A stretch of DNA of 63,969 bases, filler included, from Octopus bimaculoides (lineage: Eukaryota): assembly GCF_001194135.2 (NCBI RefSeq). It is 4 parts of 4 records of this genome, joined end to end, with 100 filler letters (N's around TTAATTAATTAA, not from the genome) between each part and the next. Parts side by side here need not be neighbours in the genome. Positions count along the whole stretch, not along the records: positions 41,281 to 58,535 come from NC_068990.1; 3 more parts are not named here. The stretch is one strand, 5' to 3'. The translations under genes were made by a program, and so were the position numbers. Positions 41,281 through 58,635 of the stretch are shown piece after piece; the stretch's first letter is position 1; every line of letters begins with the position of its first letter. The notes beneath the pieces are model-generated. The model worked only from the letters and a program-made list of their open reading frames with translations. It was not told where the DNA came from and did not search any database.

Positions 41281-43620
41281 GATAAAGGTGTGAGTGCCAA
41301 GCAGAACAGGAGTGGAGAGAGCGTGTCTCCCTGGAATATTCCTCTTCTAATGGTGATGGTTTTGGTTTTCACGAGTCCCTCTTTTGTTCGGAGCTGTATG
41401 ACCGTCTGCCATTTATTCATAGATTGTCTTATGTATTTTATAATTATTGGTGCCACTTTGTTTATGGCTAGTGTTTCGAGGATCCACATGTAGGAAAGAC
41501 TATCAAAAGGCTTTCGGTAGTCGATCCAGGCCATACTGAGGCCTTTCTTCTTTCTGTGGCTGTCTTCAGTTATGGCTTTATTGATCATTAATTGATATTT
41601 TCAGCTGTATGAGCCCTTGCAGCATCCCTTCTGCTCTTCTGGAAACAGGTTGTTTTCTCCCAGGTGCTTACTCAATCTTTGAGATATTATTGCAGTAAAG
41701 GCTTTGTAGATTGTAAGGAGACAGGTTACAGGTCTGTAGTTTTGTGGTTTTGCCGTTTCCGTGGATTTGTGAATTAGGATGGTTTTTCCTTTTCGTGAGC
41801 CATTCAGGCATTGTCTCTGGTTCTGCTAGTATGTCGTTAAAATTTTCAGCCATCTTTTTGTGCATTGTTGTCGGATACTTTAACCAGAAGTTGGGGATCT
41901 TGTCTTGCCCAGGTGCCTTCCAGTTGCTTAGTCTTTGCAGTGCCTAGGTGACGTCTTCAGTTGTTATAGAGGTCCAGAGTTGCTCAGGTGGTAAGTTCGT
42001 TGTTTTAATAGTCCTTTACTGAAATTGTTGCTTCACCGACCATATTTCTTCCAGTTCTTCTGCTGTTGGTGCTGCAGTAATGTCTATTTTATTTTTGCCC
42101 AGTTCTTGGTAGAATTTGTTGGGGTTGGATTTGAACTGTTTGTTTTGTTCAAAGAAACGTTGGCGTTTCTCATATCGGCGGATCCTTTGTGCTTTGGCAA
42201 GGATATCTTGCTTTAGCTTTTCTTTTGCCTCAGGTAAATGTTATTTCTGTAATGTATTTGTACAGTATTTTTGCTTTCTTCTTGTTACTTAGTAGTGTTG
42301 ATTGTCTACTAATTTCGTTAAGAATAGACAAATCTTTTCTTTCTTTTTATTTTTGTTTTGGATATTATTTACCCACAAGGTTTGTTTGGGTGGTGGTACT
42401 CCTGTGTGGATAGGTTTGAGGGAGTATCCTGCTTCTTTTTTGGCTGCAGTGGCTGCCGCATATATTATGTCATTTAGCTAAGTGATATTGCCATTTGTTT
42501 CTGTAGCTATTAGTTCCGTGACGGCCAGGTTTATGCTATTTATTATTGATGTTGTTTTATTGTCTATTTCAATTTTTGTGAGGTATAATCTGTGGTCCAT
42601 TCTAAGATCTATTGTTTTCAGTTCCTTGATTATTCACATTTTTATAGTATCATAATCATTAGGCTCCCCTACACTGTTTCCAGATTTTAGATTTGTTTCG
42701 CCTTCCTTCTCATTCATATGTTTGTCTGTGGTGTTCTGGATTGGTGCTTTTTGTACATTATTATACATCCCTCCGGTCTGGGTTTGTTGTTTTTGTTTAC
42801 TTCGTTTTTAGTGGGAATGGTACGTTTGTCTTCGTGTTTTACTATCTCAGTGTTTATATTATTTGGCATTGTTGTGTGGCTACTATATATTTTCCTGATG
42901 TATTTTTCCTTTTAATGGTTCTATTTCTATTTCTGATATTATTTGCTTTGAGAATATATCTTCGTATGTTAGCCAGTTTATTAGGGTTCATTGCTGAATC
43001 TAAGTCTTTATTTAGGTTATTTTTCTTCCATATTTTATATGTATGTGTTGCTGAGCTTTCGTTCTTTGGGTAGAGCGTTGCTGTAAAATAAGCGTGGAGG
43101 ATTGAAATATGTTCCTCACGTGTCCATTTATGCCATTTTGGTTTTCTTTTTGCAGGGCATGAGGAACAACGTCCGGTCCTTTATTTTGACGGTCATGATT
43201 TTCGTAGGGTACCGGTCTGTTCATTTCTGTTGTCAAATTGTTTTGCACGTGTAGTTTTTCGTACGTTTTGTGTAACAAGTTTAAAGTACGCACTTCCCGA
43301 TTGTTATTCTTGGGTTGAATAATACCGGTATTTTAAAAATTTATTTGTAATTTTTTTATACATGGTGTTTGGGGCCGGAAATGGTTTGGTAAGCGTGTTT
43401 ACATGTGCTCTGCGAGCAGTGGAGATGATATCCAGTTAAAATACATCATTCCATTTGCAAAATAGAAATAAATTTCAATGAGTATTACTTTCTCGGATAT
43501 AGTCCAACCCTCTATCAGCTAATTTTGGCTACATGCGATGTTTTTATTTCCGATGTTTTTGGATAAAAATTTCGGAGCAGTGTTTCATCGCTCTCACATG
43601 TTAAACGTCCCCGGTGTTCT
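41281..43620 (-). mobile_element. R4/Dong-type LINE, 5' half including RT domains 0-4
   Basis: Contains NWKAPGQDKIPNFWLK, NYRPVTCL, AWIDYRKPFDS and RRGIFQGDTLSPLLFCLAL; starts directly after (AAT)n. Confidence 0.9.
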
Positions 43621-43623
43621 CTG

Positions 43624-43671
<48 letters not shown>

Positions 43672-44198
43672 GTTCAGTAGTTTTATTTTTATAACGTGCT
43701 TTCACTTCACTACCGAGNNNNNNNNNNNNNNNNNNNNNNNNNNNNNNNNNNNNNNNNNNNNNNNNNNNNNNNNNNNNNNNNNNNNNNNNNNNNNNNNNNN
43801 NNNNNNNNNNNNNNNNNNNNNNNNNNNNNNNNNNNNNNNNNNNNNNNNNNNNNNNNNNNNNNNNNNNNNNNNNNNNNNNNNNNNNNNNNNNNNNNNNNNN
43901 NNNNNNNNNNNNNNNNNNNNNNNNNNNNNNNNNNNNNNNNNNNNNNNNNNNNNNNNNNNNNNNNNNNNNNNNNNNNNNNNNNNNNNNNNNNNNNNNNNNN
44001 NNNNNNNNNNNNNNNNNNNNNNNNNNNNNNNNNNNNNNNNNNNNNNNNNNNNNNNNNNNNNNNNNNNNNNNNNNNNNNNNNNNNNNNNNNNNNNNNNNNN
44101 NNNNNNNNNNNNNNNNNNNNNNNNTCCAGTGTATATAGGTCCCAGCTCTGTCGTGTCTGTGAATATATTCCTTCTTAGCCAGGACTGGGCAGCCAGAG

Positions 44199-44251
<53 letters not shown>

Positions 44252-44870: not shown

Positions 44871-44925
<55 letters not shown>

Positions 44926-45139
44926 CTTCTTTCAATTCTGTTTCCATTTCTTGCCGAGTGTGTTCCTGACACCTAGGGCAGAGAAATACACTGTATGCAT
45001 TAGTTGGTCATTAAAATCGACAAACCAGATTGTTTATTTACAAAGTCATGTGATAGAGCAAAAAGTGGAAGAAAGACTGAGAAAATGGAAAAATAAAAAA
45101 ATGAAAAAGTAAACAAAGAAAGTAAAGGGTGAAACAGGA

Positions 45140-46658
45140 AAGAAAATTCACAGTGACAATGCTCTTCTCAATACGTGTGATATACCAGTCAAGACAATGT
45201 TTTGCGCTTCATGCACGCATGGTAAGCCAGGGAACATTCTTAAATAATTTTCATTTCCCCTTTTGATCATTCCAAGTGCTCTTACAATCACTAGTATCAT
45301 AACCGTCTTGAGTTGCCATATCTTTTCGATTTTAACCATAAATCTTGATATTTTCTGAGCTTATCAAATTCTTTTGTCGAGATATTATGGTCACAGGGTA
45401 TGCTCATGTCAATCAATAAGCAGACTTTATTGTTTTGGTCTTTCAGAACAATATCTGGTTTATTTGCTTTGATGGCCCGGTCTGTACATACTAAAGAATC
45501 ATTACATTTTCTACCTCAGTTACAGCCTCAAAGTGGTGCTTGTACTATTTGTCAGCAGTTTTGATTTTATAATGCCGGCACATTATCCAATGTAGATATT
45601 GGCCAACATTGTAATGTCTTGATTTGTACTTTAAAGGTACTAAAACCTTACACTAAGAGATTAGGTGGTCGACTGTTTCAATCCCATCATTGCAGTATCG
45701 GCACTTTTGGTCTACACTATTTTTCATGAACTTGGCTCGATAGTTCCTGGTCAATAAGCTCTGATCTTGAGCAGCCAAGAGAAAGCCTTCACTCTTTGCC
45801 TTTAGCTCTGAGCTCCGTAGCCACTGATGGGTGTGCTTCTGGTCTACATCAGCTTCTTTGGTACGGGCCACATATTTGCCATGCAGAGGTTTTTCTTGTC
45901 ACCCATCAGCCAATTGTTAAAACGTATTTTGCTTTGCCATTGATTTCACTTTGTTTGCAACTACAGTTTATACACGCTGCTCAACCTGAGTATTATTCAA
46001 ACTCGCTTGAAAATATTTTGCTCCTCTTCATAAGAGAATGAAACTTCTTACGTCTTTAGAATCCAATCATTAGACTTTCAAAATAATTTCTCCGTCTAAT
46101 TGTGGTGGTTTTGTAAGAGATTTCAAATTGGGCCAAGCCTCGACCTCCGTGAGCTCTGGGTAGGTAAAGACGATCTGCGTCTGCCTTTGGGTGGTGCATC
46201 TTATTGCAAGTCAACAGCTTACGGATTTTCCTGTCAATCTTCCTTATTTCGCTCATATTCCACATTGAAACTGTAAATAACAACAGGAAATGCTAAAGAA
46301 GTTATAGCTAACACCTTGTTACGTGCACTTAACTCAGATTTTAGGACTGCTTGAACTCTCCTGTAACATTCCTTCCCGATCTTCTCTTATATGCTTGCAT
46401 GCTGAATGCCAGAGTCCTCATTTATTCCGAAGTATTTGTAAGTGTGTTCCTGCTCGAGTTCTTTTATGACACCACTGAATGTGAGGTCTTCACTTTCCCT
46501 TTCTGGAAAGTGACCTTGGCACATTTATCAAGACCGAATTCCACCCGCATGTCATCACTGTATACTTTCACAGTATGTAGATGTCCTTCAAGCTAATTAT
46601 CGTCTTTGCCATAGAAATTTAAGTCATCCGTATTGAATAGATGACTTATGTTCTTATG
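45140..46658 (-). mobile_element. R4/Dong-type LINE, downstream part of an interrupted copy
   Basis: Runs from SHLFNTDDLNFY through HHPKADADRLYLPR..GGRGL, FLLAAQDQ and CRYC..IETVDHLIS to VLRRALSL*. Confidence 0.9.
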
Positions 46659-46798
46659 GTATGTTGTCAACTTAATGTGACAGGCCCATGAAATGGAAGA
46701 ATGCTACTGCTATTTAGCACCAGGAAACACCGTTTCCAACTGGCTATGACACATTTTCTGTGTCCTTATGTTATCAAAGGGGAGATAAGCACCTCCAT

Positions 46799-46873
46799 CC
46801 AGCAAAGCCAACGTCCAGAGACTAGTTTCAGAGTCATTGCTCATCCTCAGTTTGGAGTAGCATGGCATGCTAG
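46799..46873 (-). ncRNA. Type I hammerhead ribozyme (GUC site)
   Basis: tccaaa-CTGAGGA-T-GAG-caatga-CTC-T-GAAA-CTAG-TC-tctgga, with an extended bulged stem I. Confidence 0.8.
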
Positions 46874-47199
46874 ATGAATTTTTTATTACGACCTTAAAGA
46901 TCAATACATAGTTGGGACAGCACAGGAGAAGACATAAAAAATGTGATGTGTTCGAATGATACCTATTATTTAAAAATATTGACGATGAAATAGTCTTTTT
47001 CTATATGAGTAAGGGATATGCCCTGTTGCCTCAAAGGCCCAGCGGCTATCTCCTTCCTTTTATTTCCCCCTCTTTTCCAAAGCCGATTAAGCCAGGACCC
47101 TTGCACCTACATTTCTTAACACAGATTTCCATCTTTCCTCAAACACACTTTTCGACAGGGTTCTTCTCTCCAGCCCTATCATGCTCTTCAGATGATATC

Positions 47200-48290
47200 T
47201 GAAGTATTGTAGCAAACCAGGGCCAGAAATGAAAGACCCTGTCACGAATCCTTGCATCCTAGTCTTCCACACACATAAAATTATGGATGAGATTGTGATA
47301 CCGGAGGACGTCAAACTACGAGTGGTAGTGGAGGGAAGGCCTCCCATTCGCTACCACTGTGGAGTACGGGGTCACATGCAAGCGAGGTGTCCCCAGAAGC
47401 AAGAAGTGGAACAGGAGGTAGAACAGGAGGAGGTGGAGCAACGTGTGGTGGCGCATGGCCAGGTAAAGGAAGTGGTGGAAGCAGTAAAAGCGAAATACCC
47501 AATCGGAAAGGGAAAGTAGGAAAGGGAGGAAAATGCATTATCGCCTCCAAAAAGCCCACAAAAAAAGAGGAAAGGCAATTTGGAGGAGATGCAGATAGAA
47601 GGCGCAGAAGGAACAAAAAAGAAAATTGCAGAAGAGAGAACAAATAGAAAAGAAAGTATTCAGAAAGGAAAGGAAACAACATGGTAGAGCGGGAGTCAGA
47701 TGGACACACAAGTACAAGGAACATCGGGAGAGAGTTGAGATGGAAAGTGGAAAGAAGTGGCGAAAAGAAGAAATGTGAGGAGGATGATGGAATACAAGAG
47801 GAGTATAGAGATAGAGAAATGGATTACAAAGATGAAAAATGTCATAAGAGGATTACGAAGATGAAAAATGTCATAAGATAACGGAAAGTGAGGGAAATGA
47901 ACATACAGAGGACGACAAGGTGGTTTTGCTGGAAAGTGATAGAGCGGATAAATTGAAAGAATTGTTTGGTGAGCAGATGGATTTAACGGCGTTGTGGTGG
48001 CATTCGAAGACATTGTGCAATACTTTGTCGATGAAAATAGTAAGTAAAATTTGTAAAATTAAAATGTTTTTTTAAAAAAATGTACCATAAACTGTACACG
48101 AACATGAACTGCATAAACAGTTAAATGACACTGTTTGCGTATGGGGTGCGAATAAGACATTTCATTTTTCTCATTATATCACTATATTCATATCCATTCG
48201 ATTTTCGTTTTATGTACCCCACTGTATTGTGTTGTTTGTCTTTGTTCGTCCCATCTTTCTAAGAGCTATATGCTTATAATAAAGAAAAAA
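47200..48290 (+). mobile_element. Internally deleted L1/Tx1-type LINE (ORF1 knuckle and 3'UTR)
   Basis: VVVEGRPPIRYHCGVRGHMQARCP is a degenerate CCHC knuckle; ends AATAAAGAAAAAA. Confidence 0.6.
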
Positions 48291-48606
48291 CGCCTTTTTC
48301 ATCTGCGACCAGTTGTTGCCTACGGTATGTAAATTCGTTTCCTGTTCTGTTATTGCGAATGTTTGTTATATTTGAATTGAAAATTCTATTGGAATTTGAA
48401 TTTTTGTCCTGTGGAAAACAGTAATTTTCGCCCTATGGGGTAGAAAATTTCTGTAAATTTATTGAACTGTGATTTTGTGAAGACACTTTCTGAAAATTTT
48501 TATGTCATTTATGACCAACGAAGTTATGGACACTCAACCAGCCGTCAGCTATGCTACAGCAGCAGAAGGAGTGTAAATAGCTATATGCTCATAGTAAAGA
48601 ATAAAA

Positions 48607-48681
48607 CTAGCAAGCCATGCTACTCCAGACTGATGATGAGCAATAACTCTGAAACTAGTTTCTGGATGCTGGCTTTGCTGG
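48607..48681 (+). ncRNA. Type I hammerhead ribozyme (GUU site)
   Basis: tccaga-CTGATGA-T-GAG-caataa-CTC-T-GAAA-CTAG-TT-tctgga; stem I extends as CTAGCAAGCCATGC / GCTGGCTTTGCTGG. Confidence 0.8.
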
Positions 48682-48883
48682 GTGGAGGTGCTTATTTTCT
48701 TTTTGAAAACATAAGGACACAGAAAATGTGTCAGGGTCAGCTGGAAACGGTGTTTCTTGGGGCTAAATTGCAGTAGCATTCTTCCCTTTCATTGGACTGT
48801 CACATTAAGATGACAACATACCATCACTTTATCGTGCGGCTACTGTATTAATTTCTCTGAGAGATTTAGAAATGTAATATTTC

Positions 48884-50530
48884 TATTTTCCTATGTCCAA
48901 TTTTATATCCACACCCTATTCTATTAAGTTCGCTTGTAAGGGGTATTAGGGCTAAGCAAAACATTAAAGGTGAAAGTAGATCACTTTAGAAATTGCCACA
49001 GTTGATGTTAATGGTTTTTGTGGTCAATAGTCCATTAGAGTTGTAAAATTGGAGATTCGTATTCCACACTAACATGCTTCAGGAAGTTTGAAATGACAGG
49101 ATTAAATTTGAAGATGTACAGCGATTTCAAGATCCATGAATGCAGTATGTTGTCAAAGGCCTTTTTTATAATCAATCTATACGTAACTGAGATTTCTGTA
49201 TTTGTTATGACAGTTCTCAAAGACCATGCGATTGATTAAGAGTTGGTCTTTGCATCCCTATGAGCCTCGTCGGCACCCTTTTTGTTCAGTGAGGAAAATA
49301 TCGTTCTGTTCCATAAATTTGTATATTTTCCCCACGAGGAAGAATTTTAAAATTTTATACGTGGTAGATAGACATTTTATGGGTCGATAGTTTGGGAGAA
49401 ATTTGGTTTCATTATTTTTCGTTAGTAGGTAAGAAATACCTCTAGCTAACCAATCAGGTGCTTTCGTAGTATCTCTCATAATTTCATTGAATAACTGGAC
49501 TAACTTTTCGTGTGCGCACGGGAGCAATGCGAGCCAAAAATTGGAACCCTATCATTACCAGAGGATTTCAACTTAGTGTCATCCTTAGGTTTGCTATTGT
49601 GGTGCCCTCCCCCGCTTGTTCTGTTAAGTTTTGGTAGGATCATTCTGTGCGTCTAATCTAGTCTGCAACTTTCATTGTAAGTCTTTTCATCACTCCAGAT
49701 ATCTTTCCAAAAGTTTTCAACTTCTATAGAAGGGGAGTCTTCAACGGTTATTTTCTCCTTCCCTATTTCTCTGTAGAATGTTTTCGCACTTTGCTTGTAA
49801 AACTTGTTTCTCTTCTCACATCTTCATATTCTTTGAGCCTTTGCTTGGACTTTTTGTTGCAGTGTTTCTTTTGCTGAAAGCAGTTCTCTTGATGAGAATC
49901 TATGTTTTCTCTTCATTTTTCTTCCTTTTCAGGTTTTTACATAATTTCCACAAATTAGTTCATTCAATATTGATATTTCCCCTCTCATTATTTCAATGTC
50001 TTGTTCAATTTTACATTTCCAGACTGGAATTCTCTTGTTTGCATATCTTTGTTTTTTCGGAGGCAATTGTCTTAGCAGCTGCGTAAGTAATTTCGTTTAA
50101 TTCAGTGTTGTTACATAGTTTCCAATTTTAATTTGTTTTCTATTTTGGATTGTATTTGAGAGTTTATGAAGTGGTTCTCTATTAGCGTGTCTTACGACAC
50201 CAAGCTTATTCAGGATTTTCTGCTTCATTTCTATCATAGTCTCTCTATGATCTTCAGTAAATGAATAGTCTTCAAATATTGTTTCTTTACTACTTTCCTC
50301 GCTATCTTTATCTGGTTCATTACAATTTATTTCTGCAGAGGTTTGCGTGTTCTGGTCAGATAACAGTCTTTCAATTGAGACTTGCGGAGAGTTGTTCTCT
50401 TCGTCTGGTTTTTCATTTCCTTTCTGTCTTATATTTAGGTCATTTCCCGTTGCGTGCTTGATCGCGGTTATTTCACTATCTGTGAGTCTTTAATTTCTAG
50501 AGATATCCTTAACATAATATAGTCTGCTGT
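48884..50530 (-). mobile_element. R4/Dong-type LINE, upstream part of the interrupted copy
   Basis: Contains NYRPIKCLSTTYK, EQKGCRRGS, IDYKKAFD and DLLSPLMFCLALIPL...GYKIGHRKI. Confidence 0.9.
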
Positions 50531-50536
50531 CTTGAT

Positions 50537-50574
<38 letters not shown>

Positions 50575-50779
50575 CTTCTTCTTCTTCTTCTTCTTCTTCT
50601 TCTTCTTCTTCTTCTTCTTCTTCTTCTTCTTCTTCTTCTTCTTCTTCTTTGTCGTCCTGACCTTCAAAATTTTGTTCCCTAAAGTTGCTTATTTAGTTAC
50701 TAAACGTTTTTCTATAGCACCACTATTGCATAGGTGGGTCGGTTTGTGTTAATGCCCTTCTTGGAGTCTGTAATCTTAA

Positions 50780-53035
50780 AATAATTGTTTCAAAATTAAT
50801 TTAAAAAGAAAACAAATGTGGTGAAACCAGTCTTGCCGAATAACATAAAAGAGGAGTCGAGAAGTGTTTCAGATAGAGAGTTGTAAGACGCCGCAGTGAC
50901 CTCCGCCTACTACCCACAAATAAAAAGGGATGCGAGCACGCAGCAGGTTCAAATTCTCGCACACAAAATTGCCGGGACTTCAAAAAATAATGTGTCAAGC
51001 TGAGGTAGAAAAGTTAATAAGACTGGAAAATGTGCAAGCCAGTATTACCATCCCACACGAGGTGTTGTCAGAAACTAAAAAGAAAACTGTGTTGTACAGA
51101 TGCGTCTTCGTAAACACGAAGCGGCCAGAAACGGCGAGATAGGCGGACGTGGAAAGGGCACTGAAAGAAATAATGCTCGACATTCTTCATGTTTTGAGGG
51201 CTAAACAGTTTGTGGGCATTTCAGTGCCATTTAAATCAGAAGCTCTGGCTGCCAAACACTCCGTGTTTCCATGTCGGATTGAAAATATGTGCTTCGTCCA
51301 TCCTATTTAGGAAGGAGGATGGTGCGCATAAAGATAGCTGGGATACCACCAGAGGTAAACTTGTGGTGGATTCTCGCAGCGATCGTTTTGGAAGAGGGCA
51401 ACAGCTTCCTGGAGGTCAAAAGGACATGACGTGAAAATTGGCCTGGAACCAGTGTGGAGGTGCTCCTCCACATTCAACCACAAGCTATTCACAAGATCCC
51501 AGATCGCATTCGCCTTCCAGGAGGGGAAGAATTACATGTCACAGTGAATGGTAGAACGCCACAGTGCCACCTGCGTGGAGCGACAGGACACTTGAAAGTC
51601 TTCTTCCCCCCAACAGAAGACAGGGAACTATGGCATTCCTTTACTGCAAACACCAAGTTCCCCAAAACATCAACAACAACAACAACCATACCAACAACGA
51701 CGCGTAACAAAAGCAGCACCAATCCTAGCAACAATGGCACCATCATCAAGAACAGTAAAACCAATAAACCTAACAATAGCAAGCTCAGCAGCATCATCAA
51801 CATCAGTCACAGCAGCAGCACCAGCCACAGCAACAACAACAGCAACCTCAGTAACACCAGCAACACCAACAATACCAATAACACCAGCAACAGATGCACC
51901 AGAAGAGATAATACATAAGAACACACACAACACCCAGGGCTACCTCAACGAAGCTCTCCCTCTCTTCGTCTACTTCAAACCCCATCGACACATGACCTGA
52001 TTCCACAGGTTCAGATTCATTGGCAACACAGCGAAAATGAAGGGAAATCACAAAAACCAAAAAGAAAAAAAACGAAAAGGAATCACAAAAATCCATCAAG
52101 TCCCACATCACCCCACACATCAAGAAACAGAAAATACACCAACAATTGTCACAGACACACATACAGCTTCACCAACCTCTCCAGCACCACAATCACAAAC
52201 CTCGCCACCAACACTACTCGAAATGCAACAACCGACCAAAAGAAAACACTCCTAAGAACAACAACGAGCAACCTCACAAACACCAAACTTCGTGCTAGTG
52301 AGGAGGTCAAATACAAAATTGATGGACCTCCTATCACGAAGGAAAGATGTCGAGAGAGAGGTTGTGATCTTTGGCACCGGCACCTTTAAAGTGCCAGAAG
52401 CATTGGTGTTGGTGCGGAATGCCTATAGAGGCATATAAACTCACTAGGAAGAGCTTCCCACAAGAAATGTAAAGGCCACGGGTAGGCTTTTTAAAGAGTT
52501 CCCAGAGGGACCCCAACAACTCATGGATACGCGAATGGTAAGTAGATGCCCCTTTGCGTCTTCTATCAATTCTGTCCGGTCAACGTGGGATGTTTAAGAA
52601 TAGGTTTGTATTGTCAGAACTAGGGTGCATACTATAAGATACGAGGGGACGAAAACCGTTTGATGGGCCCGGGTGGCAGAAGTACTACGTGTCAACAAAG
52701 TCACAATTCTGTCTTTGTTGGGAAGGGACGGGCGTATGCTACACGAGTTCAAACAGAGGTGTACGGAATTTCAGCAGCACTTCGCCGAACTGTTCGGGGC
52801 GCGCGGCGTGTCAGGGACGAAGGTGGATTTCACCTCCTACCTCGGCAGCATGCTGCGCCTTTTGGCCAGGGATGCGGAGTTCTGCAAGATGCCGATAACA
52901 GCCGAAGACATACGGGACGCCATGAAGGCCTGCACTACAGAGAAGTCTCTGGGGTTGGATGGTCTACCTTTCGAGCTTTATCTTCACATGCCAGACTTTT
53001 TCGGTGATTTCAAAGTGCGCGTTCACTTTGCGTAG
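50780..53035 (+). mobile_element. Decayed, internally deleted L1/Tx1-type LINE
   Basis: ORF1 knuckle VTVNGRTPQCHLRGATGH with a T/N/S-rich linker; ORF2 piece PITAEDIRDAM...LGLDGLPFELY. Confidence 0.75.
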
Positions 53036-53252: not shown

Positions 53253-53745
53253 GAGTGAGAGAGCGGTACATGTCATCAAAGTGACGAAGCCGGGTACACC
53301 AGGCACATGCATCACAACCATATGTGCGTGACATAGTGATCTCCTATCAAGATAAACCGTGCATGATCTTGCAGGTGGGCCAGTTAGTATTTTCTTCAGG
53401 TCGAGTAGCCCATCCCACTAAAAAGGTCCCTGAATAAGGGTTGATTAAGGATAATGAACAAAACACACATGTTTCCAAAGGTTAAATTCTCCAAACCCCA
53501 AAGAATTCCTCTCAACACATGGCTATGATGCTCCCCCACTACTTCTGCTCATGATCAGAGATGCACATATCATCAGCCACTAAGCGACATGCTGAACTGG
53601 TCAAGCAACTGACAAGCAAATCTGTGGTATTGAGCAGAATATTTGTTGTAGTCCATCTTTTGGACTACAACAGTGTACATGATAACACTTCAAATCAGTT
53701 AAGATCAAAAGCCATGAGAGCCACTGCCTGGTACTACTTCAGCGC
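53253..53745. mobile_element. Non-coding interspersed element between (ATT)n tracts, copy 2
   Basis: Colinear with 24896-25442 apart from one deletion near the left end. Confidence 0.8.
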
Positions 53746-53796
<51 letters not shown>

Positions 53797-54574: not shown

Positions 54575-57500
54575 TCTTGTTTCTTACGCGTCGCACATGT
54601 GTTTGTGGTGTTGTGGTGAAAATTGCTGTTTCTTAGTGTTATTATTTATAATAACTGCTGTTTTTGTTAAACTGTTGAATTTCGTAACTGCTGGAGTTTT
54701 CATTTGAAAATACTAAGTGCTTGTAGAAAGCACACGTTGTTCATTCCCCCGTTGGGGGGAAGAATGTCGTCTAGCGAGAGGCCTACGGTTGGAACAGAGA
54801 TGTTTGTTTTTCCTGTCGAAGCGAAGAATTGCATGTTGTCTGGCGAGGAGCCAACTACGAGCAAAGAAATAATGGATTCCCCCGTTGTAAAAAGAATAAC
54901 AAAATGTATGAGTTATTTGGAGATGTGTCTGAAAGCTCGTCAGAACTTTCACAAGAAGAATACCCGAGTTTGCCAAAAAACAAAAGTATTGTGTCCAAAA
55001 GAAAAATTGATGCACCTAGCATCCAAACTGAACAACCAAAAAAAGTAAAAGATAAGTTTTGCGTTGGCAGCTGGGGGTTGAACCCGGCTGCTTTCGACGA
55101 ATAAGTGTGATTTTATGAAATATAGTGAAATGATGCAAATAAATGATAACGTGGTTAAAATACAACTACCGGAGAAATTACAATTATATTTAAAACTTAC
55201 GGTTTGCAAAAAAGAAACATTGAGAGAATTACAGAAGAGAAGATAGAGAAGTTCCTGAAGCCAATCTGGCAAGAGGCAGGAAATTTGGTACGGTGGAAGT
55301 AAGGTTTACCAACAAAGAAATTGCACAAGAACTCTCAGTAGAAACGCTGAAAACGGACGACGTGGTGCTCATCCCCACCTATATGGGAATGAGAACGTCC
55401 AGAATTAAAATCACAAGGGTCCCACCGGAGTGGATCCTACGTGGTTGGTGGCGACAGTCCTAATCAAACAGGAAGAGAAAATTACCCTTCTCCAGGCTGC
55501 CGCTACCGAAAACGCTAACTGTACTGGCTAACCCTAAAATAATTGAAGCAATTCTCGAGACAATTGAGATAGGGAAAGAGACCCTCGTGGTGTCTGTTGA
55601 GGGCCGAGAATCCCGATGTCTTTTGTGCGGCCAATTAGGCCGCATTCGAAGGAACTGCAAGGAAAATGAGGAAGAGGAGGAAGAGAAGAAAGAAGAAAAA
55701 GAGGAAGAAGAAAAAGAAGAAAAAGATGAGAAGAAAACAACAAACAAAAGAAAAATACAATCAGCAACTCAACCGAGAGCGGGGACTACTACGGAACAAC
55801 GACCAAAAAAGACTGCCAGAAGAGAAAAAGAGTAATTAAGACTGCAAAAAAAAAAAAAAAAAACCTTTCGGAGAAAAATAGCAATTATGACATGTATGAA
55901 GTCCCAAATAAGACTCATAGAATTTTACAAAACAAATACCGTAAGACAGTATCATCAATGAGATTGGACTTTAATAAGTCTATATTTCATGGATTACCAG
56001 CCTCGATCCCGCGTGAAAAGGAAAAGGTGGAGACCCCCCTCCACCTGATAATTCTGTGTCGGTAATGAGACGGGATTTTAACAAATCTATTTCCCAAGAC
56101 CTGCCACCTCCGACCCTGTATCAAGAAAAGGTGGAGGGTCCCTCTCCACCGGACAGCCCTGATTAACAGGTAAGTCATGTCTATTCACATTGGTTGTATA
56201 AATGTTCGTGGCCTGTTGTCTAGCTGGAAGCAAGGACGCTTCCTAGATGACATCAAGTCAAGAGAATTGGATGTGATTGTGGCAACAGAAACCCGGGTAT
56301 GAGAAATACGGCTATGAGAAATACGTTTCTCCAAGTCGAACGGCTATGAGAATAGCTATGAGAAATACGTTTCTCCAAGTCGAGCGGAAGGTGGGGTGTT
56401 GGTCCTACTGAAAAGAAACTGGGTAGCCGAGAAAAAGTTGTTTTTTTTCTGATCCAGAAGGCAGGCTGGTCGTTCTCGACCTGACATTCAGTTGTGGCAT
56501 GATAATCAGGCTAGTTGCTATTTATGCACCCAACATTATGGGCCCGCAAAGTGAATATTTTCGTGACCTGCGCAAGTTCCTGAACACGTCGCATTCGCTA
56601 GTATTGTTAGGAGACAATATGTGACACAGTATGTGACGCACACACAGATTGTGTTGGCTCAAACACGAACAGAAAATGTAACCCAGGCTTACGGGATCTG
56701 CTAAGGCACTTCCAGCTAGCAAATCCATATAGGTTGGAACACCCGAACACTCCACAGTGGATGTGGTCAAATACTGACGTGTCTTCCAGAACATATCTAG
56801 ATAGGATTTTAATTAGAGAAACAGATAAGTCCATAGCTAAGTGTCCACAGCTTTTTCTAGTCAGCTACAGTGACCACAAGATGGTTACCTGTAAACTAAC
56901 AATAGATAAGTTACATAGTCAGGGATCTGGCTACTGGAAACTCAATACGTCTCTTTTAGCGATTGAGGAATACAGAAAGCGGATCAAGATGTTAATACAG
57001 AGGGCATTGACAGGTACCATCATTAATAACAAATGGTGGTACGCCCTAAAAAGAGCCATCAAATATGAGTCTATTANNNNNNNNNNNNNNNNNNNNNNNN
57101 NNNNNNNNNNNNNNNNNNNNNNNNNNNNNNNNNNNNNNNNNNNNNNNNNNNNNNNNNNNNNNNNNNNNNNNNNNNNNNNNNNNNNNNNNNNNNNNNNNNN
57201 NNNNNNNNNNNNNNNNNNNNNNNNNNNNNNNNNNNNNNNNNNNNNNNNNNNNNNNNNNNNNNNNNNNNNNNNNNNNNNNNNNNNNNNNNNNNNNNNNNNN
57301 NNNNNNNNNNNNNNNNNNNNNNNNNNNNNNNNNNNNNNNNNNNNNNNNNNNNNNNNNNNNNNNNNNNNNNNNNNNNNNNNNNNNNNNNNNNNNNNNNNNN
57401 NNNNNNNNNNNNNNNNNNNNNNNNNNNNNNNNNNNNNNNNNNNNNNNNNNNNNNNNNNNNNNNNNNNNNNNNNNNNNNNNNNNNNNNNNNNNNNNNNNNN

Positions 57501-58535
57501 NNNNNNNNNNNNNNNNNNNNNNNNNNNNNNNNNNNNNNNNNNNNNNNNNNTCTCTCGGGGTCGGATGCGGAGTCTTGCGAAGGGTCAATCACGTCTGGGG
57601 AGGTGATGGAGGCTTTGGCCGACTGTAAAACGGGTAGGTCGCCGGGACTTGATGGTCTTCCGTACGAGCTGTATAAATGTATGCCAGACTTGTTCGAGCA
57701 TCTACTGGCTGACGTTTACGCGAACTGGCAATAGAGTGGGTTTATCCCCAGATCTGTGCGCCGGAGAATGGTGACGTTGGTCAGAAAGGACCCGGACAAG
57801 GGGGACGTTATAGAGAATTTCAGGCCCATCACTCTGTTAAACGCAGAAGTGAAGATTTTGGCCAAGGTCTTAGCAGAAAGGTTGGCACGTGTCTATCTTA
57901 TCCGATATACCATAGAGAAGGTTGGTAATAAATCTGGCAAAGGTGGGGCATTGGTACGTTTGGACGAGTCTAAGGCTTTTGATAGGGTTTACTATCGATA
58001 CCTGGTGACTGTGCTTGCGTTGTTCGGCCTGGGCCTTGGCTTCCTCAAGTGGTTTATCGCTTTGTACCACAACATGGACTCGATAGTTCGGGTGAACGGT
58101 TTCCTTTCGAAGCCGTTCTGCATCAGACGCTCGGTTCGTCAAGGATGTCCACTCTCACCGCTTTTGTATGTGGTGGCTCTCGAGCCCCTACTACGAAGGT
58201 TGAGTGGCATTCCGAGAGAACCAAGTCTAGTAAAGTTTGTCACAGCTTACCCGGATGATATCACTATCGGCATAACCTCAGTAGCACGCCTACGTGAAGT
58301 GGGTAAGACAATTGAGGCTTACGAAGAGGTGGCAGGAGCAAAGATTAACCGGGAAAAGTTGGTCGGCTTGCAGCTCGGCACCTGGGTTGGCACGCATGCG
58401 TTAAGATTGAGGCACTTCTGGTGGATTCTCCTGGATAGTGAACGGGTGTGGTCTCCGCTGGCCAGACAAATGTTCCCTGAATTCAAAAGTTTTTGCGAAC
58501 AGGAAGCCTGGTGTTCTCGTAGACCAAGGTCGAGT
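54575..58535 (+). mobile_element. Near-full-length L1/Tx1-type LINE (ORF1, EN, RT), decayed and cut by a scaffold join
   Basis: ORF1 CLLCGQLGRIRRNC; EN IGCINVRGL, VATETR, AIYAPN, SDHKMV, GYWKLN; RT SPGLDGLPYELY, FRPITLLN, KAFDRV, VRQGCPLSPLLY, YPDDIT. Confidence 0.9.
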
Positions 58536-58635
58536 NNNNNNNNNNNNNNNNNNNNNNNNNNNNNNNNNNNNNNNNNNNNTTAATTAATTAANNNNNNNNN
58601 NNNNNNNNNNNNNNNNNNNNNNNNNNNNNNNNNNN
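58536..58635. other. Artificial scaffold-join spacer
   Basis: N44-TTAATTAATTAA-N44. Confidence 0.9.

What the first reader, a model, noticed from the sequence alone, without database searches (positions are those of the whole stretch)
46659..48883. 2.2-kb insertion with hammerhead-bearing inverted termini and LINE cargo, splitting a Dong RT in frame
SEEN: ~230-bp inverted arms (about 46659-46890 and 48592-48821, roughly 15% diverged by eye) each hold a complete hammerhead pointing outward; the right arm has ~60 extra nt to 48883. The unit is flanked by TATGTTCTTATG (46647-46658) and TATTTTCCTATG (48884-48895), a 10/12 match. Deleting the insert and one repeat gives a continuous minus-strand frame, LSPLMFCLALIPLTSELNRIGCGYKIGHRK-I-SHLFNTDDLNFY, so the boundaries are fixed independently by the host RT. 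The interior shows no Penelope RT or GIY-YIG, only L1/Tx1 remnants. KNOWN: Penelope-like elements carry type I hammerheads in their terminal repeats and can have inverted termini with a 3' tail; retrozymes are non-autonomous hammerhead retroelements. INFERENCE: a non-autonomous ribozyme-bounded element that either carried foreign cargo or was a fold-back dimer later invaded by L1. A transcript of either strand would self-cleave near its 3' end.
Basis: partly seen in the sequence, partly recalled or inferred. Interest (0 to 1): 0.88.

Follow-up and report, generated by a model that had tools for sequence, protein, structure and literature searches.

The report
Penelope-style inverted hammerhead repeat insertion
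An old 2.2-kb retrotransposon insertion that splits a decayed LINE reverse-transcriptase gene ends in two inverted copies of a hammerhead-ribozyme-bearing repeat, with the one-sided "tail" typical of Penelope-like element integration; it is a decayed single example of a known kind, not a new kind of element.

Summary
The arms 46656-46891 and 48589-48824 are inverted copies (206/236 identical, no gaps). A 59-nt extension lies only on the right. A 10/12 duplicated 12-mer flanks the unit. Removing the insert plus one 12-mer restores the host LINE RT frame, which aligns without a gap to 10 of 11 homologues.

Each arm carries an outward-pointing type I hammerhead motif. It has a full catalytic core, a 6-bp helix I with an internal loop, and a 1-bp helix III with the palindromic tetraloop CUAG. 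The base of helix II is a U.U mismatch instead of G10.1-C11.1. No Rfam hammerhead model detects it, but the architecture matches the experimentally active axolotl retrozyme ribozyme Ax353.

The interior has no RT or GIY-YIG. It holds one degenerate LINE ORF1 zinc-knuckle module and about 900 nt of unassigned sequence.

Inverted 3'-terminal copies, a one-sided tail and a TSD are the published signature of Penelope-like element integration, in which both target strands are cut and extended from two RT start sites.

I read it as a single, old insertion of a non-autonomous HHR repeat made by Penelope-like element machinery. No second copy could be found, so a mobile "cargo-carrying" family is unsupported. 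Efficient self-cleavage of transcripts from this locus is unlikely.

The parts
46647..46658 (.). Left copy of the 12-bp target-site duplication (TATGTTCTTATG). Its last 3 nt (ATG) also align to the arm, giving 3 nt of junction microhomology.
46656..46891 (-). Left arm: inverted copy of the HHR-bearing repeat. The RNA-sense strand is minus, the 3' end faces outward (left), and there is no tail.
46814..46856 (-). Left-arm type I hammerhead motif: UCCAAA-CUGAGGA-U-GAG-CAAUGA-CUC-U-GAAA-CUAG-UC|UCUGGA. Predicted cleavage is between 46820 and 46819.
46892..47228 (.). Left part of the interior, unassigned. No protein-family hit and no similarity to the arm or tail.
47229..48030 (+). Degenerate LINE (L1/Tx1-type) ORF1 fragment. 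It holds a beta-strand plus CCHC-knuckle module at 47274-47411 (knuckle about 47352-47396, first Cys lost), then a frameshifted purine-rich K/E/R region. A 29-bp tandem duplication lies at 47821-47878.
48031..48588 (.). Right part of the interior, AT-rich (29-36% GC), unassigned. It may be upstream sequence of the same template RNA as the right arm. It contains a 32-nt direct repeat (48261-48291) of the arm's inner boundary (48576-48607).
48589..48824 (+). Right arm: HHR-bearing repeat. The RNA-sense strand is plus and the 3' end faces outward (right).
48624..48666 (+). Right-arm type I hammerhead motif: UCCAGA-CUGAUGA-U-GAG-CAAUAA-CUC-U-GAAA-CUAG-UU|UCUGGA. Predicted cleavage is between 48660 and 48661. 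Helix I continues through an internal loop (UGCUAC / UGC) into a 4-bp closing stem GCCA/UGGC.
48825..48883 (+). One-sided 59-nt 'tail' beyond the arm. The arm/tail boundary lies in an AC-rich tract just 3' of a small stem-loop.
   Evidence: PMC8557442, PMC11167929
48884..48895 (.). Right copy of the 12-bp target-site duplication (TATTTTCCTATG).
45400..49700 (-). Host: decayed LINE with many stops and frameshifts. It has an RVT_1 domain, a downstream zf-RVT and a KPDIV...LIDMS motif. The insertion splits it between the SPLxF motif and the YxDD box (here NTDD).

Best explanation
This is one old retrotransposition event made by the enzymes of a Penelope-like element (PLE) acting on a non-coding, hammerhead-bearing RNA: a retrozyme-like repeat or a pLTR-derived RNA.

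Proposed steps:
1. The endonuclease made staggered cuts 12 bp apart in the RT region of a LINE copy.
2. Both exposed 3'-OH ends primed reverse transcription from the 3' region of the template RNA.
3. One priming started at the distal start site, giving the right arm plus the 59-nt tail. The other started at the proximal start site, giving the left arm without a tail and with 3 nt of microhomology.
4. The two cDNAs therefore sit in inverted orientation with their RNA 3' ends, and hence their hammerheads, facing outward.
5. The 1.7 kb between them is not PLE coding sequence. Most likely it came with the same event. It could be upstream sequence of a read-through or chimeric template for the right-hand cDNA, or a template switch onto another RNA or cDNA such as a LINE ORF1 transcript while the two cDNAs were being joined.

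The locus has since decayed. The arms are 13% diverged and the TSD is 2/12 diverged. It is not expected to be mobile or to self-cleave efficiently now.

Shown: the geometry, the TSD, the tail, the HHR motif architecture, and the absence of RT/EN. Inferred: which enzyme made the insertion, both-strand priming, and the origin of the interior.
For: Single event with exact boundaries: a 10/12 TSD, host RT frame restored, and 10 of 11 homologues gap-free across the junction with the 12-mer's 4 codons present once.

Inverted 236-nt arms at 87% identity. The arms and the TSD show similar divergence (13% against 2/12), which fits copies made at the same time.

The asymmetric 59-nt extension is part of the insert, not of the host.

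Published PLE hallmarks:
- An inverted 5'-truncated copy forming inverted repeats, and a 30-40 bp tail often present at one end only (PMC8557442).
- The purified Poseidon protein cleaves and extends both target strands. It initiates RT at two adjacent internal sites, and the tail is the sequence between them (PMC11167929).
- Paired HHRs on opposite strands 100-700 bp apart have been seen in Schistosoma (PMC4209133).

HHR motif: it occurs only in the arms, with 0.023 expected per shuffle. Its architecture is identical to the active axolotl Ax353 ribozyme, CUGAUGA-U-NNN-loop-NNN-U-GAAAC. Three of the 4 inter-arm differences in the 43-nt motif fall at N7, loop 2 and H17.

No RT or GIY-YIG in the insert.

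Retrozymes are proposed to be mobilised by PLEs and derived from them (PMC7229834; bioRxiv 10.64898/2026.07.22.740005).
Against: No second copy of the arm, and no autonomous PLE sharing it, could be examined. The source genome is not in any collection available here. PLE involvement therefore rests on architecture alone.

The tail is 59 nt, against the usual 30-40 nt.

The HHR is of the canonical retrozyme type rather than the minimal type reported in PLE pLTRs. No Rfam hammerhead model reports it, even at E<=10.

Retrozymes normally sit in direct tandem, not in inverted pairs.

The interior could equally have arrived after the insertion. No internal TSD or poly(A) signature decides this either way.

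Part of the arm divergence could reflect two different source copies rather than age.
Confidence: 0.55

Rival explanations
1. The insertion was PLE-type as above, but the interior is secondary. The original insert was a head-to-head inverted dimer, or a PLE copy with an inverted truncated partner. Its centre was later replaced by a LINE fragment and other sequence through nested insertion, deletion or repair at the palindrome centre.
For: The locus is old: the arms are 13% diverged and the host LINE is full of stops. Long inverted repeats are fragile (general knowledge). The interior is a patchwork of compositionally distinct segments. A LINE ORF1 piece lacking its own 3' end is not what a simple template read-through predicts.
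Against: No nested TSD, poly(A) tail or LINE 3' end flanks the ORF1 fragment. An internal 5'-side LINE fragment is not what target-primed LINE insertion normally leaves. At 13% divergence a PLE RT would still be detectable, and none is found, so large deletions would also be needed.
Confidence: 0.22
2. The whole 2.2-kb unit is one member of a genuinely mobile, non-autonomous composite family. The family would be bounded by inverted hammerhead repeats and carry captured LINE sequence as cargo.
For: A clean TSD surrounds the whole unit. PLEs are reported to retrotranspose foreign transcripts in trans (PMC8557442).
Against: No second copy was found anywhere I could search. An RNA with 236-nt inverted termini folds into a long hairpin. 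A PLE RT starting in the right arm would not by itself regenerate the left inverted arm, so the structure is better explained as a product of integration than as a template.
Confidence: 0.1
3. The arms are terminal inverted repeats of a cut-and-paste DNA transposon or foldback/MITE-like element, and the hammerhead-like motif is fortuitous.
For: 236-nt inverted termini and a TSD. No Rfam hammerhead model reports the motif, even at E<=10.
Against: The TSD does not abut the right arm. 59 nt of non-host, non-repeat sequence intervene, and no alternative duplication exists at the arm ends. A 12-bp TSD fits no common TIR superfamily (from general knowledge). The HHR motif is expected 0.023 times per 17 kb by chance, yet it has the full canonical type I layout including the loop 1 and loop 2 arrangement of retrozyme HHRs.
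Confidence: 0.05
4. Assembly artefact: a mis-join or collapsed repeat created the inverted arrangement.
For: The scaffold has N gaps elsewhere (43718-44124 and 57077-57550). PLE tandem/inverted structures are known to confuse short-read assemblies (PMC8557442).
Against: No N run lies inside the interval. The flanks are two halves of one RT gene, in frame, with a TSD. The arms differ at 30 positions, so they are not a collapsed identical repeat.
Confidence: 0.03

Closest known systems
Penelope-like element insertions (Penelope/Poseidon, Neptune clades): pLTR with HHR, inverted 5'-truncated copy, one-sided tail
   Same: Inverted terminal copies of an HHR-bearing 3' region. An extension present at one end only. 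A TSD. HHR sense strands read toward the 3' ends. The arm/tail boundary lies in an AC-rich tract next to a stem-loop, which resembles the Poseidon (PAc) RT start site. An AUG at the start of HHR stem II, as in PAc.
   Different: No RT or GIY-YIG ORF anywhere in the insert. The tail is 59 nt rather than 30-40 nt. The HHR is of the canonical type (6-bp helix I, loops 1 and 2), not the minimal PLE type with a long helix II. No direct (tandem) pLTR is present. The sequence between the arms is non-PLE.
Metazoan non-LTR retrozymes (e.g. axolotl Rtz_353 with HHR_Amex2 and Rtz_331 with HHR_Amex1; PMC7229834)
   Same: Non-coding and low in GC. Repeat length is in the 170-400 nt range (arm plus tail is 295-308 nt). 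Canonical type I HHR. U.U at the base of a 3-bp helix II, exactly as in Ax353. Single-bp helix III with a palindromic tetraloop, as in Ax330 and newt. Similar loop 1 flanks (GCUxC ... UGCU).
   Different: The copies are inverted and 1.7 kb apart, not in head-to-tail tandem. No sequence similarity to the axolotl units outside the HHR module. Copy number and circRNA expression are unknown.
L1 twin priming (inversion with 5' truncation during target-primed reverse transcription)
   Same: The same geometry: the second target strand's 3'-OH also primes cDNA synthesis, giving oppositely oriented segments inside one TSD.
   Different: In L1 the two segments come from different parts of one RNA, so there is no duplication. 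Here both arms copy the same 3' region, as expected when an RT uses a defined internal start site on both strands.
Plant LTR retrozymes
   Same: Non-autonomous, with hammerhead-containing terminal repeats.
   Different: Plant retrozymes have direct LTRs with type III HHRs, PBS/PPT and 4-bp TSDs, and are mobilised by Gypsy elements. None of these features is present here.

Membership tests
Hammerhead ribozyme, type I | Conserved core CUGANGA ... GAAA ... UH at the three-way junction | tested here: met
   Both arms: CUGAUGA/CUGAGGA, GAAA, and GUU or GUC at the cleavage site.
Hammerhead ribozyme, type I | Helices I, II and III around the core, with helix I open-ended | tested here: met
   Helix I is 6 bp (5 bp plus an A.C mismatch in the left arm), followed by an internal loop and a 4-bp closing stem. 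Helix II is 3 bp with a hexaloop. Helix III is A-U closing the palindromic CUAG. The minimum-free-energy (MFE) fold of the right arm forms helices I and II.
Hammerhead ribozyme, type I | G10.1-C11.1 pair at the base of helix II | tested here: not met
   U.U in both arms; the strict descriptor fails. The same deviation occurs in the active axolotl HHR_Amex2/Ax353.
Hammerhead ribozyme, type I | Match to a curated Rfam hammerhead covariance model | tested here: not met
   No hammerhead family reported at E<=1 over the piece or at E<=10 over each arm alone.
Hammerhead ribozyme, type I | Covariation or conservation across copies | tested here: inconclusive
   Only two copies. There are 4 differences in 43 nt: three at N7, loop 2 and H17, and one that breaks a helix I pair. 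With 13% divergence, an intact core is not statistically significant.
Hammerhead ribozyme, type I | Site-specific self-cleavage | not testable with these tools
   Needs in vitro transcription of monomer and dimer constructs.
Penelope-like elements (autonomous) | Telomerase-like RT ORF | tested here: not met
   No RVT hit in six frames of 46659-48883 at E<=1.
Penelope-like elements (autonomous) | GIY-YIG endonuclease | tested here: not met
   No GIY-YIG hit in six frames.
Penelope-like elements (insertion architecture) | HHR-bearing terminal repeats, direct or inverted, with an inverted 5'-truncated copy | tested here: met
   Inverted 236-nt arms, each with an HHR motif. Feature as described in PMC8557442.
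Penelope-like elements (insertion architecture) | [quoted passage not shown] | tested here: met
   59 nt at the right end only, inside the TSD. This is longer than the published 30-40 bp.
Penelope-like elements (insertion architecture) | Sequence relationship of the repeat to the pLTR of an autonomous PLE in the same genome | not testable with these tools
   The source genome is not available. No hits in the viral, metagenome or GTDB contig collections or in the protein collection.
Metazoan non-LTR retrozymes | Short non-coding unit (about 170-400 nt) carrying a canonical type I HHR | tested here: met
   Arm of 236-253 nt plus a 59-nt tail. Canonical type I layout. No coding constraint on the 46-codon frame.
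Metazoan non-LTR retrozymes | Head-to-tail tandem copies with an HHR in each unit | tested here: not met
   The copies are inverted and 1.7 kb apart. No tandem unit is present; only a 32-nt fragment repeat lies 315 nt upstream.
Metazoan non-LTR retrozymes | Multi-copy in the genome and expressed as linear or circular RNA | not testable with these tools
   No genome or transcriptome of the source organism is available.
TIR (cut-and-paste) DNA transposons / MITEs | TSD directly abutting both terminal inverted repeats | tested here: not met
   59 nt of extra sequence lie between the right arm and the TSD. There is no duplication at the arm ends themselves.
R4/Dong-clade LINE (host element) | RT plus a C-terminal restriction-like endonuclease, and clade placement by phylogeny | tested here: inconclusive
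   RVT_1 (E=3e-13) and zf-RVT (E=3e-6) hits. A CCHC-like motif and a KPDIV...LIDMS motif are visible in the translation. No phylogeny was done, so the clade label is unverified.

The most novel reading that the evidence does not exclude
The locus may be a preserved footprint of PLE enzymes mobilising a canonical type I hammerhead retrozyme RNA by priming on both target strands, while co-copying foreign (LINE ORF1) sequence. That would be direct structural evidence for the proposed link between retrozymes and PLEs. It would also show that such ribozyme repeats can transduce or frame cargo, possibly as a recurrent composite family in this genome.
Probability: 0.12. Interest if true: 0.6.

Novelty: new member of a known kind. 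Interest (0 to 1): 0.3.

Why it matters
Whether Penelope-like elements mobilise the animal hammerhead retrozymes is still argued mainly from co-occurrence and pLTR similarity. Here a canonical retrozyme-type hammerhead repeat sits inside a TSD with the PLE-specific inverted-copy-plus-tail signature. That is a small but concrete piece of structural support for the link. It also matches what the in vitro finding of extension on both strands from two RT start sites predicts for genomic insertions. Beyond that, it is one decayed insertion in a decayed LINE, with no sign of present activity or host function.

Tried and rejected
- Rfam scans of the piece and of each arm separately found no hammerhead family. 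The only hit in the piece-wide scan at E<=1, CrcZ at 53707-53790, is a (TAA)n artefact; the arm-only scans gave only chance snoRNA and lncRNA matches far below their gathering scores.
- Other copies of the arm were sought in several ways. blastn and tblastx within the piece found none. Exact-pattern scans of viral, metagenome and GTDB genome contigs with two conserved blocks found nothing, apart from one 21-nt chance match, L001. A profile of the arm's open frame against 5.8 billion proteins found none. A full-text search of papers for the HHR sequence found none.
- Organism identification through the host RT and the intact Tx1-like RT failed. The best hits were only about 50% identical and unnamed; named hits (Xenopus, Leptobrachium) were 32-35% identical. 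The organism remains unknown.
- The tail has no similarity to any other part of the insert, so a simple circular or tandem template is not visible.
- No nested TSD or poly(A) was found around the ORF1 fragment.
- Sensitive local alignment of all interior segments against arm plus tail found only the 32-nt repeat at 48261-48291.
- The idea that the frame opened by the HHR's AUG encodes a PLE N-terminus was rejected. It has a shared stop after 46 codons, 14 nonsynonymous against 3 synonymous differences, and no homologues.
- The ORF1 profile search mostly returned generic multi-knuckle proteins. Only the single-stretch hits were informative, and those weakly.
Full report
**1. The observation**

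- Arms. The inverted arms are 46656-46891 and 48589-48824. They are 236 nt long, 206/236 identical and have no indels (blastn E=3e-77). The repeat finder extends them to 253 nt at 85%. The 30 differences are 17 transitions and 13 transversions.
- Tail. Beyond the right arm lie 59 further nucleotides (48825-48883) before the flanking 12-mer. They resemble nothing else in the piece.
- Duplicated 12-mer. TATGTTCTTATG (46647-46658) and TATTTTCCTATG (48884-48895) match at 10 of 12 positions.
- Host frame.
- Independent check of the boundaries. I searched the reconstructed RT against the protein collection and found 107 homologues, the best about 50% identical. I aligned 11 of them. Ten cross the junction without a gap. 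The spacing between GYKI and HLF is six residues in the query and in these homologues. The four codons of the 12-mer therefore occur once in uninterrupted relatives. The duplication is real, and the insert boundaries are fixed to within the 3-nt microhomology (ATG) at the left junction.
- Assembly. No N run lies in the interval. The two gaps in the piece are at 43718-44124 and 57077-57550.

**2. The hammerhead**

No Rfam hammerhead family reports either arm. This holds at E<=1 over the 17-kb piece and at E<=10 over each arm alone. I therefore evaluated the motif directly.

On the plus strand of the right arm the layout is:
- helix I 5' strand UCCAGA;
- CUGAUGA (48630-48636);
- U-GAG-CAAUAA-CUC-U;
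- GAAA (48651-48654);
- C-UA-G, so that A15.1 and U16.1 close the palindromic tetraloop CUAG;
- U-U, with cleavage after 48660;
- helix I 3' strand UCUGGA.

Helix I continues through an internal loop (UGCUAC on the 5' side, UGC on the 3' side) into a 4-bp closing stem GCCA/UGGC.

The left arm, on the minus strand, carries the same motif with CUGAGGA, loop CAAUGA, a GUC cleavage triplet and one A.C mismatch in helix I.

A descriptor requiring the core, three helices and at least 5 of 6 helix I pairs finds exactly these two sites in the piece on both strands. It finds 0.023 sites per dinucleotide shuffle. The same descriptor recovers the four experimentally characterised retrozyme ribozymes printed in the supplement of PMC7229834: coral Amil224, mussel Mg353, and axolotl Ax330 and Ax353.

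The one departure from the canonical core environment is U.U in place of G10.1-C11.1. [quoted passage not shown] Ax353 reads CUGAUGA-U-GCC-CACUA-GGC-U-GAAAC, against CUGAUGA-U-GAG-CAAUAA-CUC-U-GAAAC here. Ax353 self-cleaves 22% in one hour as a monomer and much better as a dimer.

The single-bp helix III with a palindromic tetraloop is the HHR_Amex1/newt feature. It is associated with poor monomer activity (6% per hour) and efficient dimer activity.

Of the four inter-arm differences inside the 43-nt motif, three lie at N7, loop 2 and position 17, and one weakens helix I. With only two copies this is compatible with constraint but does not demonstrate it.

Conclusion: a structurally complete type I hammerhead motif of the canonical retrozyme type is present in both arms, pointing outward. 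Its catalytic activity is untested and, by analogy, probably weak as a monomer.

**3. The interior**

Six-frame translations of the insert hit no RT and no GIY-YIG in Pfam at E<=1. The only relevant hit is a weak zf-CCHC.

The 96-aa ORF 47229-47519 contains ...VKLRVVVEGRPPIRYHCGVRGHMQARCPQ... This matches two other places in the piece, 51490-51627 and 55584-55709, by tblastx (E=7e-5 and 5e-4). The second lies upstream of an L1/Tx1-like endonuclease/RT. The ORF also matches the ORF1 of an unrelated locus, L003, which encodes zf-CCHC, Exo_endo_phos and RVT_1 in that order (45% over 31 aa, E=8e-7).

A three-sequence profile found 888 relatives in the 1.84-billion-protein library. Most matched through the knuckle only. 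The single-stretch hits are small CCHC proteins.

The fragment is degenerate: the first Cys is lost and the downstream K/E/R-rich part is frameshifted. It carries a 29-bp tandem duplication at 47821-47878.

Segments 46892-47228 and 48031-48588 match nothing. 'LINE cargo' is therefore correct for about 150-800 nt. The other roughly 900 nt are unassigned.

The right arm's inner boundary is defined only by where homology to the left arm stops. The right-hand copy may therefore extend further inward.

**4. What it is**

The geometry is that of a PLE integration product.

Craig et al. (PMC8557442) describe PLE insertions as frequently carrying an inverted 5'-truncated copy that forms inverted repeats, and a 30-40 bp tail often present at one end only. 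Both features are attributed to the endonuclease-mediated resolution step.

The in vitro study of the Anolis Poseidon element (PMC11167929) reports three things:
- the protein cleaves and extends both target strands;
- reverse transcription starts at two adjacent internal sites in an AC-rich stem-loop;
- the genomic tail corresponds to the sequence between these sites.

Priming from both strands of a staggered cut puts two cDNAs of the same 3' region in inverted orientation, with RNA 3' ends facing outward. One carries the tail and one does not, and both sit inside one TSD. That is what is seen here. Even the arm/tail boundary falls in GACAACATACCATCAC, next to a small stem-loop, and there is 3 nt of microhomology at the tail-less junction.

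Cervera and De la Pena also noted paired HHRs on opposite strands 100-700 bp apart in Schistosoma.

The ribozyme type, however, is the canonical one. These authors assign that type to non-LTR retrozymes rather than to PLE pLTRs. Retrozymes have been proposed to be mobilised by PLEs and to derive from PLE pLTRs.

My best reading (confidence about 0.55) is a single old insertion of a non-autonomous HHR-bearing RNA, mediated by PLE enzymes. The interior was captured during the event, either as an upstream read-through of the right-hand template or by a template switch while the two cDNAs were joined.

The main rival (about 0.22) is the same insertion with the interior acquired later. I found no nested TSD or poly(A) to support that, and nothing excludes it either.

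The other rivals and why they rank low:
- A truly mobile composite family (about 0.10) lacks any second copy.
- A TIR DNA transposon (about 0.05) is contradicted by the 59-nt asymmetry inside the TSD.
- An assembly artefact (about 0.03) is contradicted by the in-frame flanks and the 30 differences between the arms.

**5. How it would behave**

- Each strand carries only one sense HHR, of a type that needs dimerisation through the palindromic ACUAGU.
- In a full-length plus-strand transcript the MFE structure pairs 212 of 236 right-arm nucleotides with the left arm. This includes 41 of 43 HHR nucleotides (duplex energy -355 kcal/mol).
- Only a transcript starting inside the interior would leave the HHR free. 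In that case the local fold does form helices I and II.

**6. Limits**

The source organism could not be identified. No copy of its genome is in the collections available. Copy number, family consensus, tandem arrays, an autonomous partner and the empty site in related species all remain untested. These are the decisive analyses.

**7. Verdict**

- The feature is a new, decayed member of a known kind: a PLE-style inverted, tailed insertion of a retrozyme-type hammerhead repeat.
- It has modest value as structural support for the retrozyme-PLE link.
- Interest: 0.3.

Noticed in passing
window 48261-48291 and 48576-48607: A 32-nt direct repeat (28/32 identical, z=8.5 against shuffles) spans the inner boundary of the right arm. 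The spacing of 315 nt is close to the arm-plus-tail length (308 nt). The sequence between the two copies (48292-48575) shows no similarity to the arm. It could be a remnant of a tandem junction or of a template switch. Unexplained.
   Followed up: partly
window 48636-48779 (+) and 46701-46844 (-): The AUG formed by A9-U-G of the hammerhead opens a 46-codon frame in the right arm, closed by a TAG that both arms share; the left arm has an additional TAG two codons earlier. The Anolis Poseidon ORF likewise starts at HHR stem II. There are 14 nonsynonymous against 3 synonymous nucleotide differences and no homologues, so it is not under coding constraint.
   Followed up: yes
window 48797-48840: The arm/tail boundary (48824/48825) lies in an AC-rich tract (GACAACATACCATCAC) just 3' of a small stem-loop (GUCA-CAUUAAGA-UGAC). 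This is reminiscent of the AC-rich stem-loop where Poseidon RT initiates in vitro.
   Followed up: partly
window 55000-58535 (+): An L1/Tx1-like LINE. It has ORF1 with a CCHC knuckle (55587-55835), an ORF whose motifs look like the C-terminal end of an AP endonuclease followed by a GYWKLN motif (56734 onward; assigned by eye, Pfam gave no endonuclease hit), and an open RT ORF (57756-58583, RVT_1 E=9e-20). It is interrupted by an N gap at 57077-57550 and cut by the edge of the piece.
   Followed up: partly
window 51200-53035 (+): A second LINE remnant. It has ORF1 RRM-like strands plus a degenerate knuckle (51454-51627), a T/N/S-rich low-complexity run, then an RT N-terminal region (52673-53035), apparently with an internal deletion.
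   Followed up: no
window 41281-41588 (-): A second copy of the host-type LINE RT (...GIFQGDTLSPLLFCLALTPL). The edge of the piece cuts it just before the position homologous to the insertion site, so it cannot serve as an empty-site control.
   Followed up: yes
window 47821-47878: A perfect-register 29-bp tandem duplication (96% identical) inside the LINE ORF1-like interior.
   Followed up: no
window 43600-44250, 44880-44960, 50540-50650, 53707-53790: (TAA)n/(ATT)n-type microsatellites and a long poly-T run. The only Rfam hit in the piece-wide scan at E<=1 (CrcZ, 21 bits against a gathering score of 95) falls on one of them and is an artefact.
   Followed up: yes
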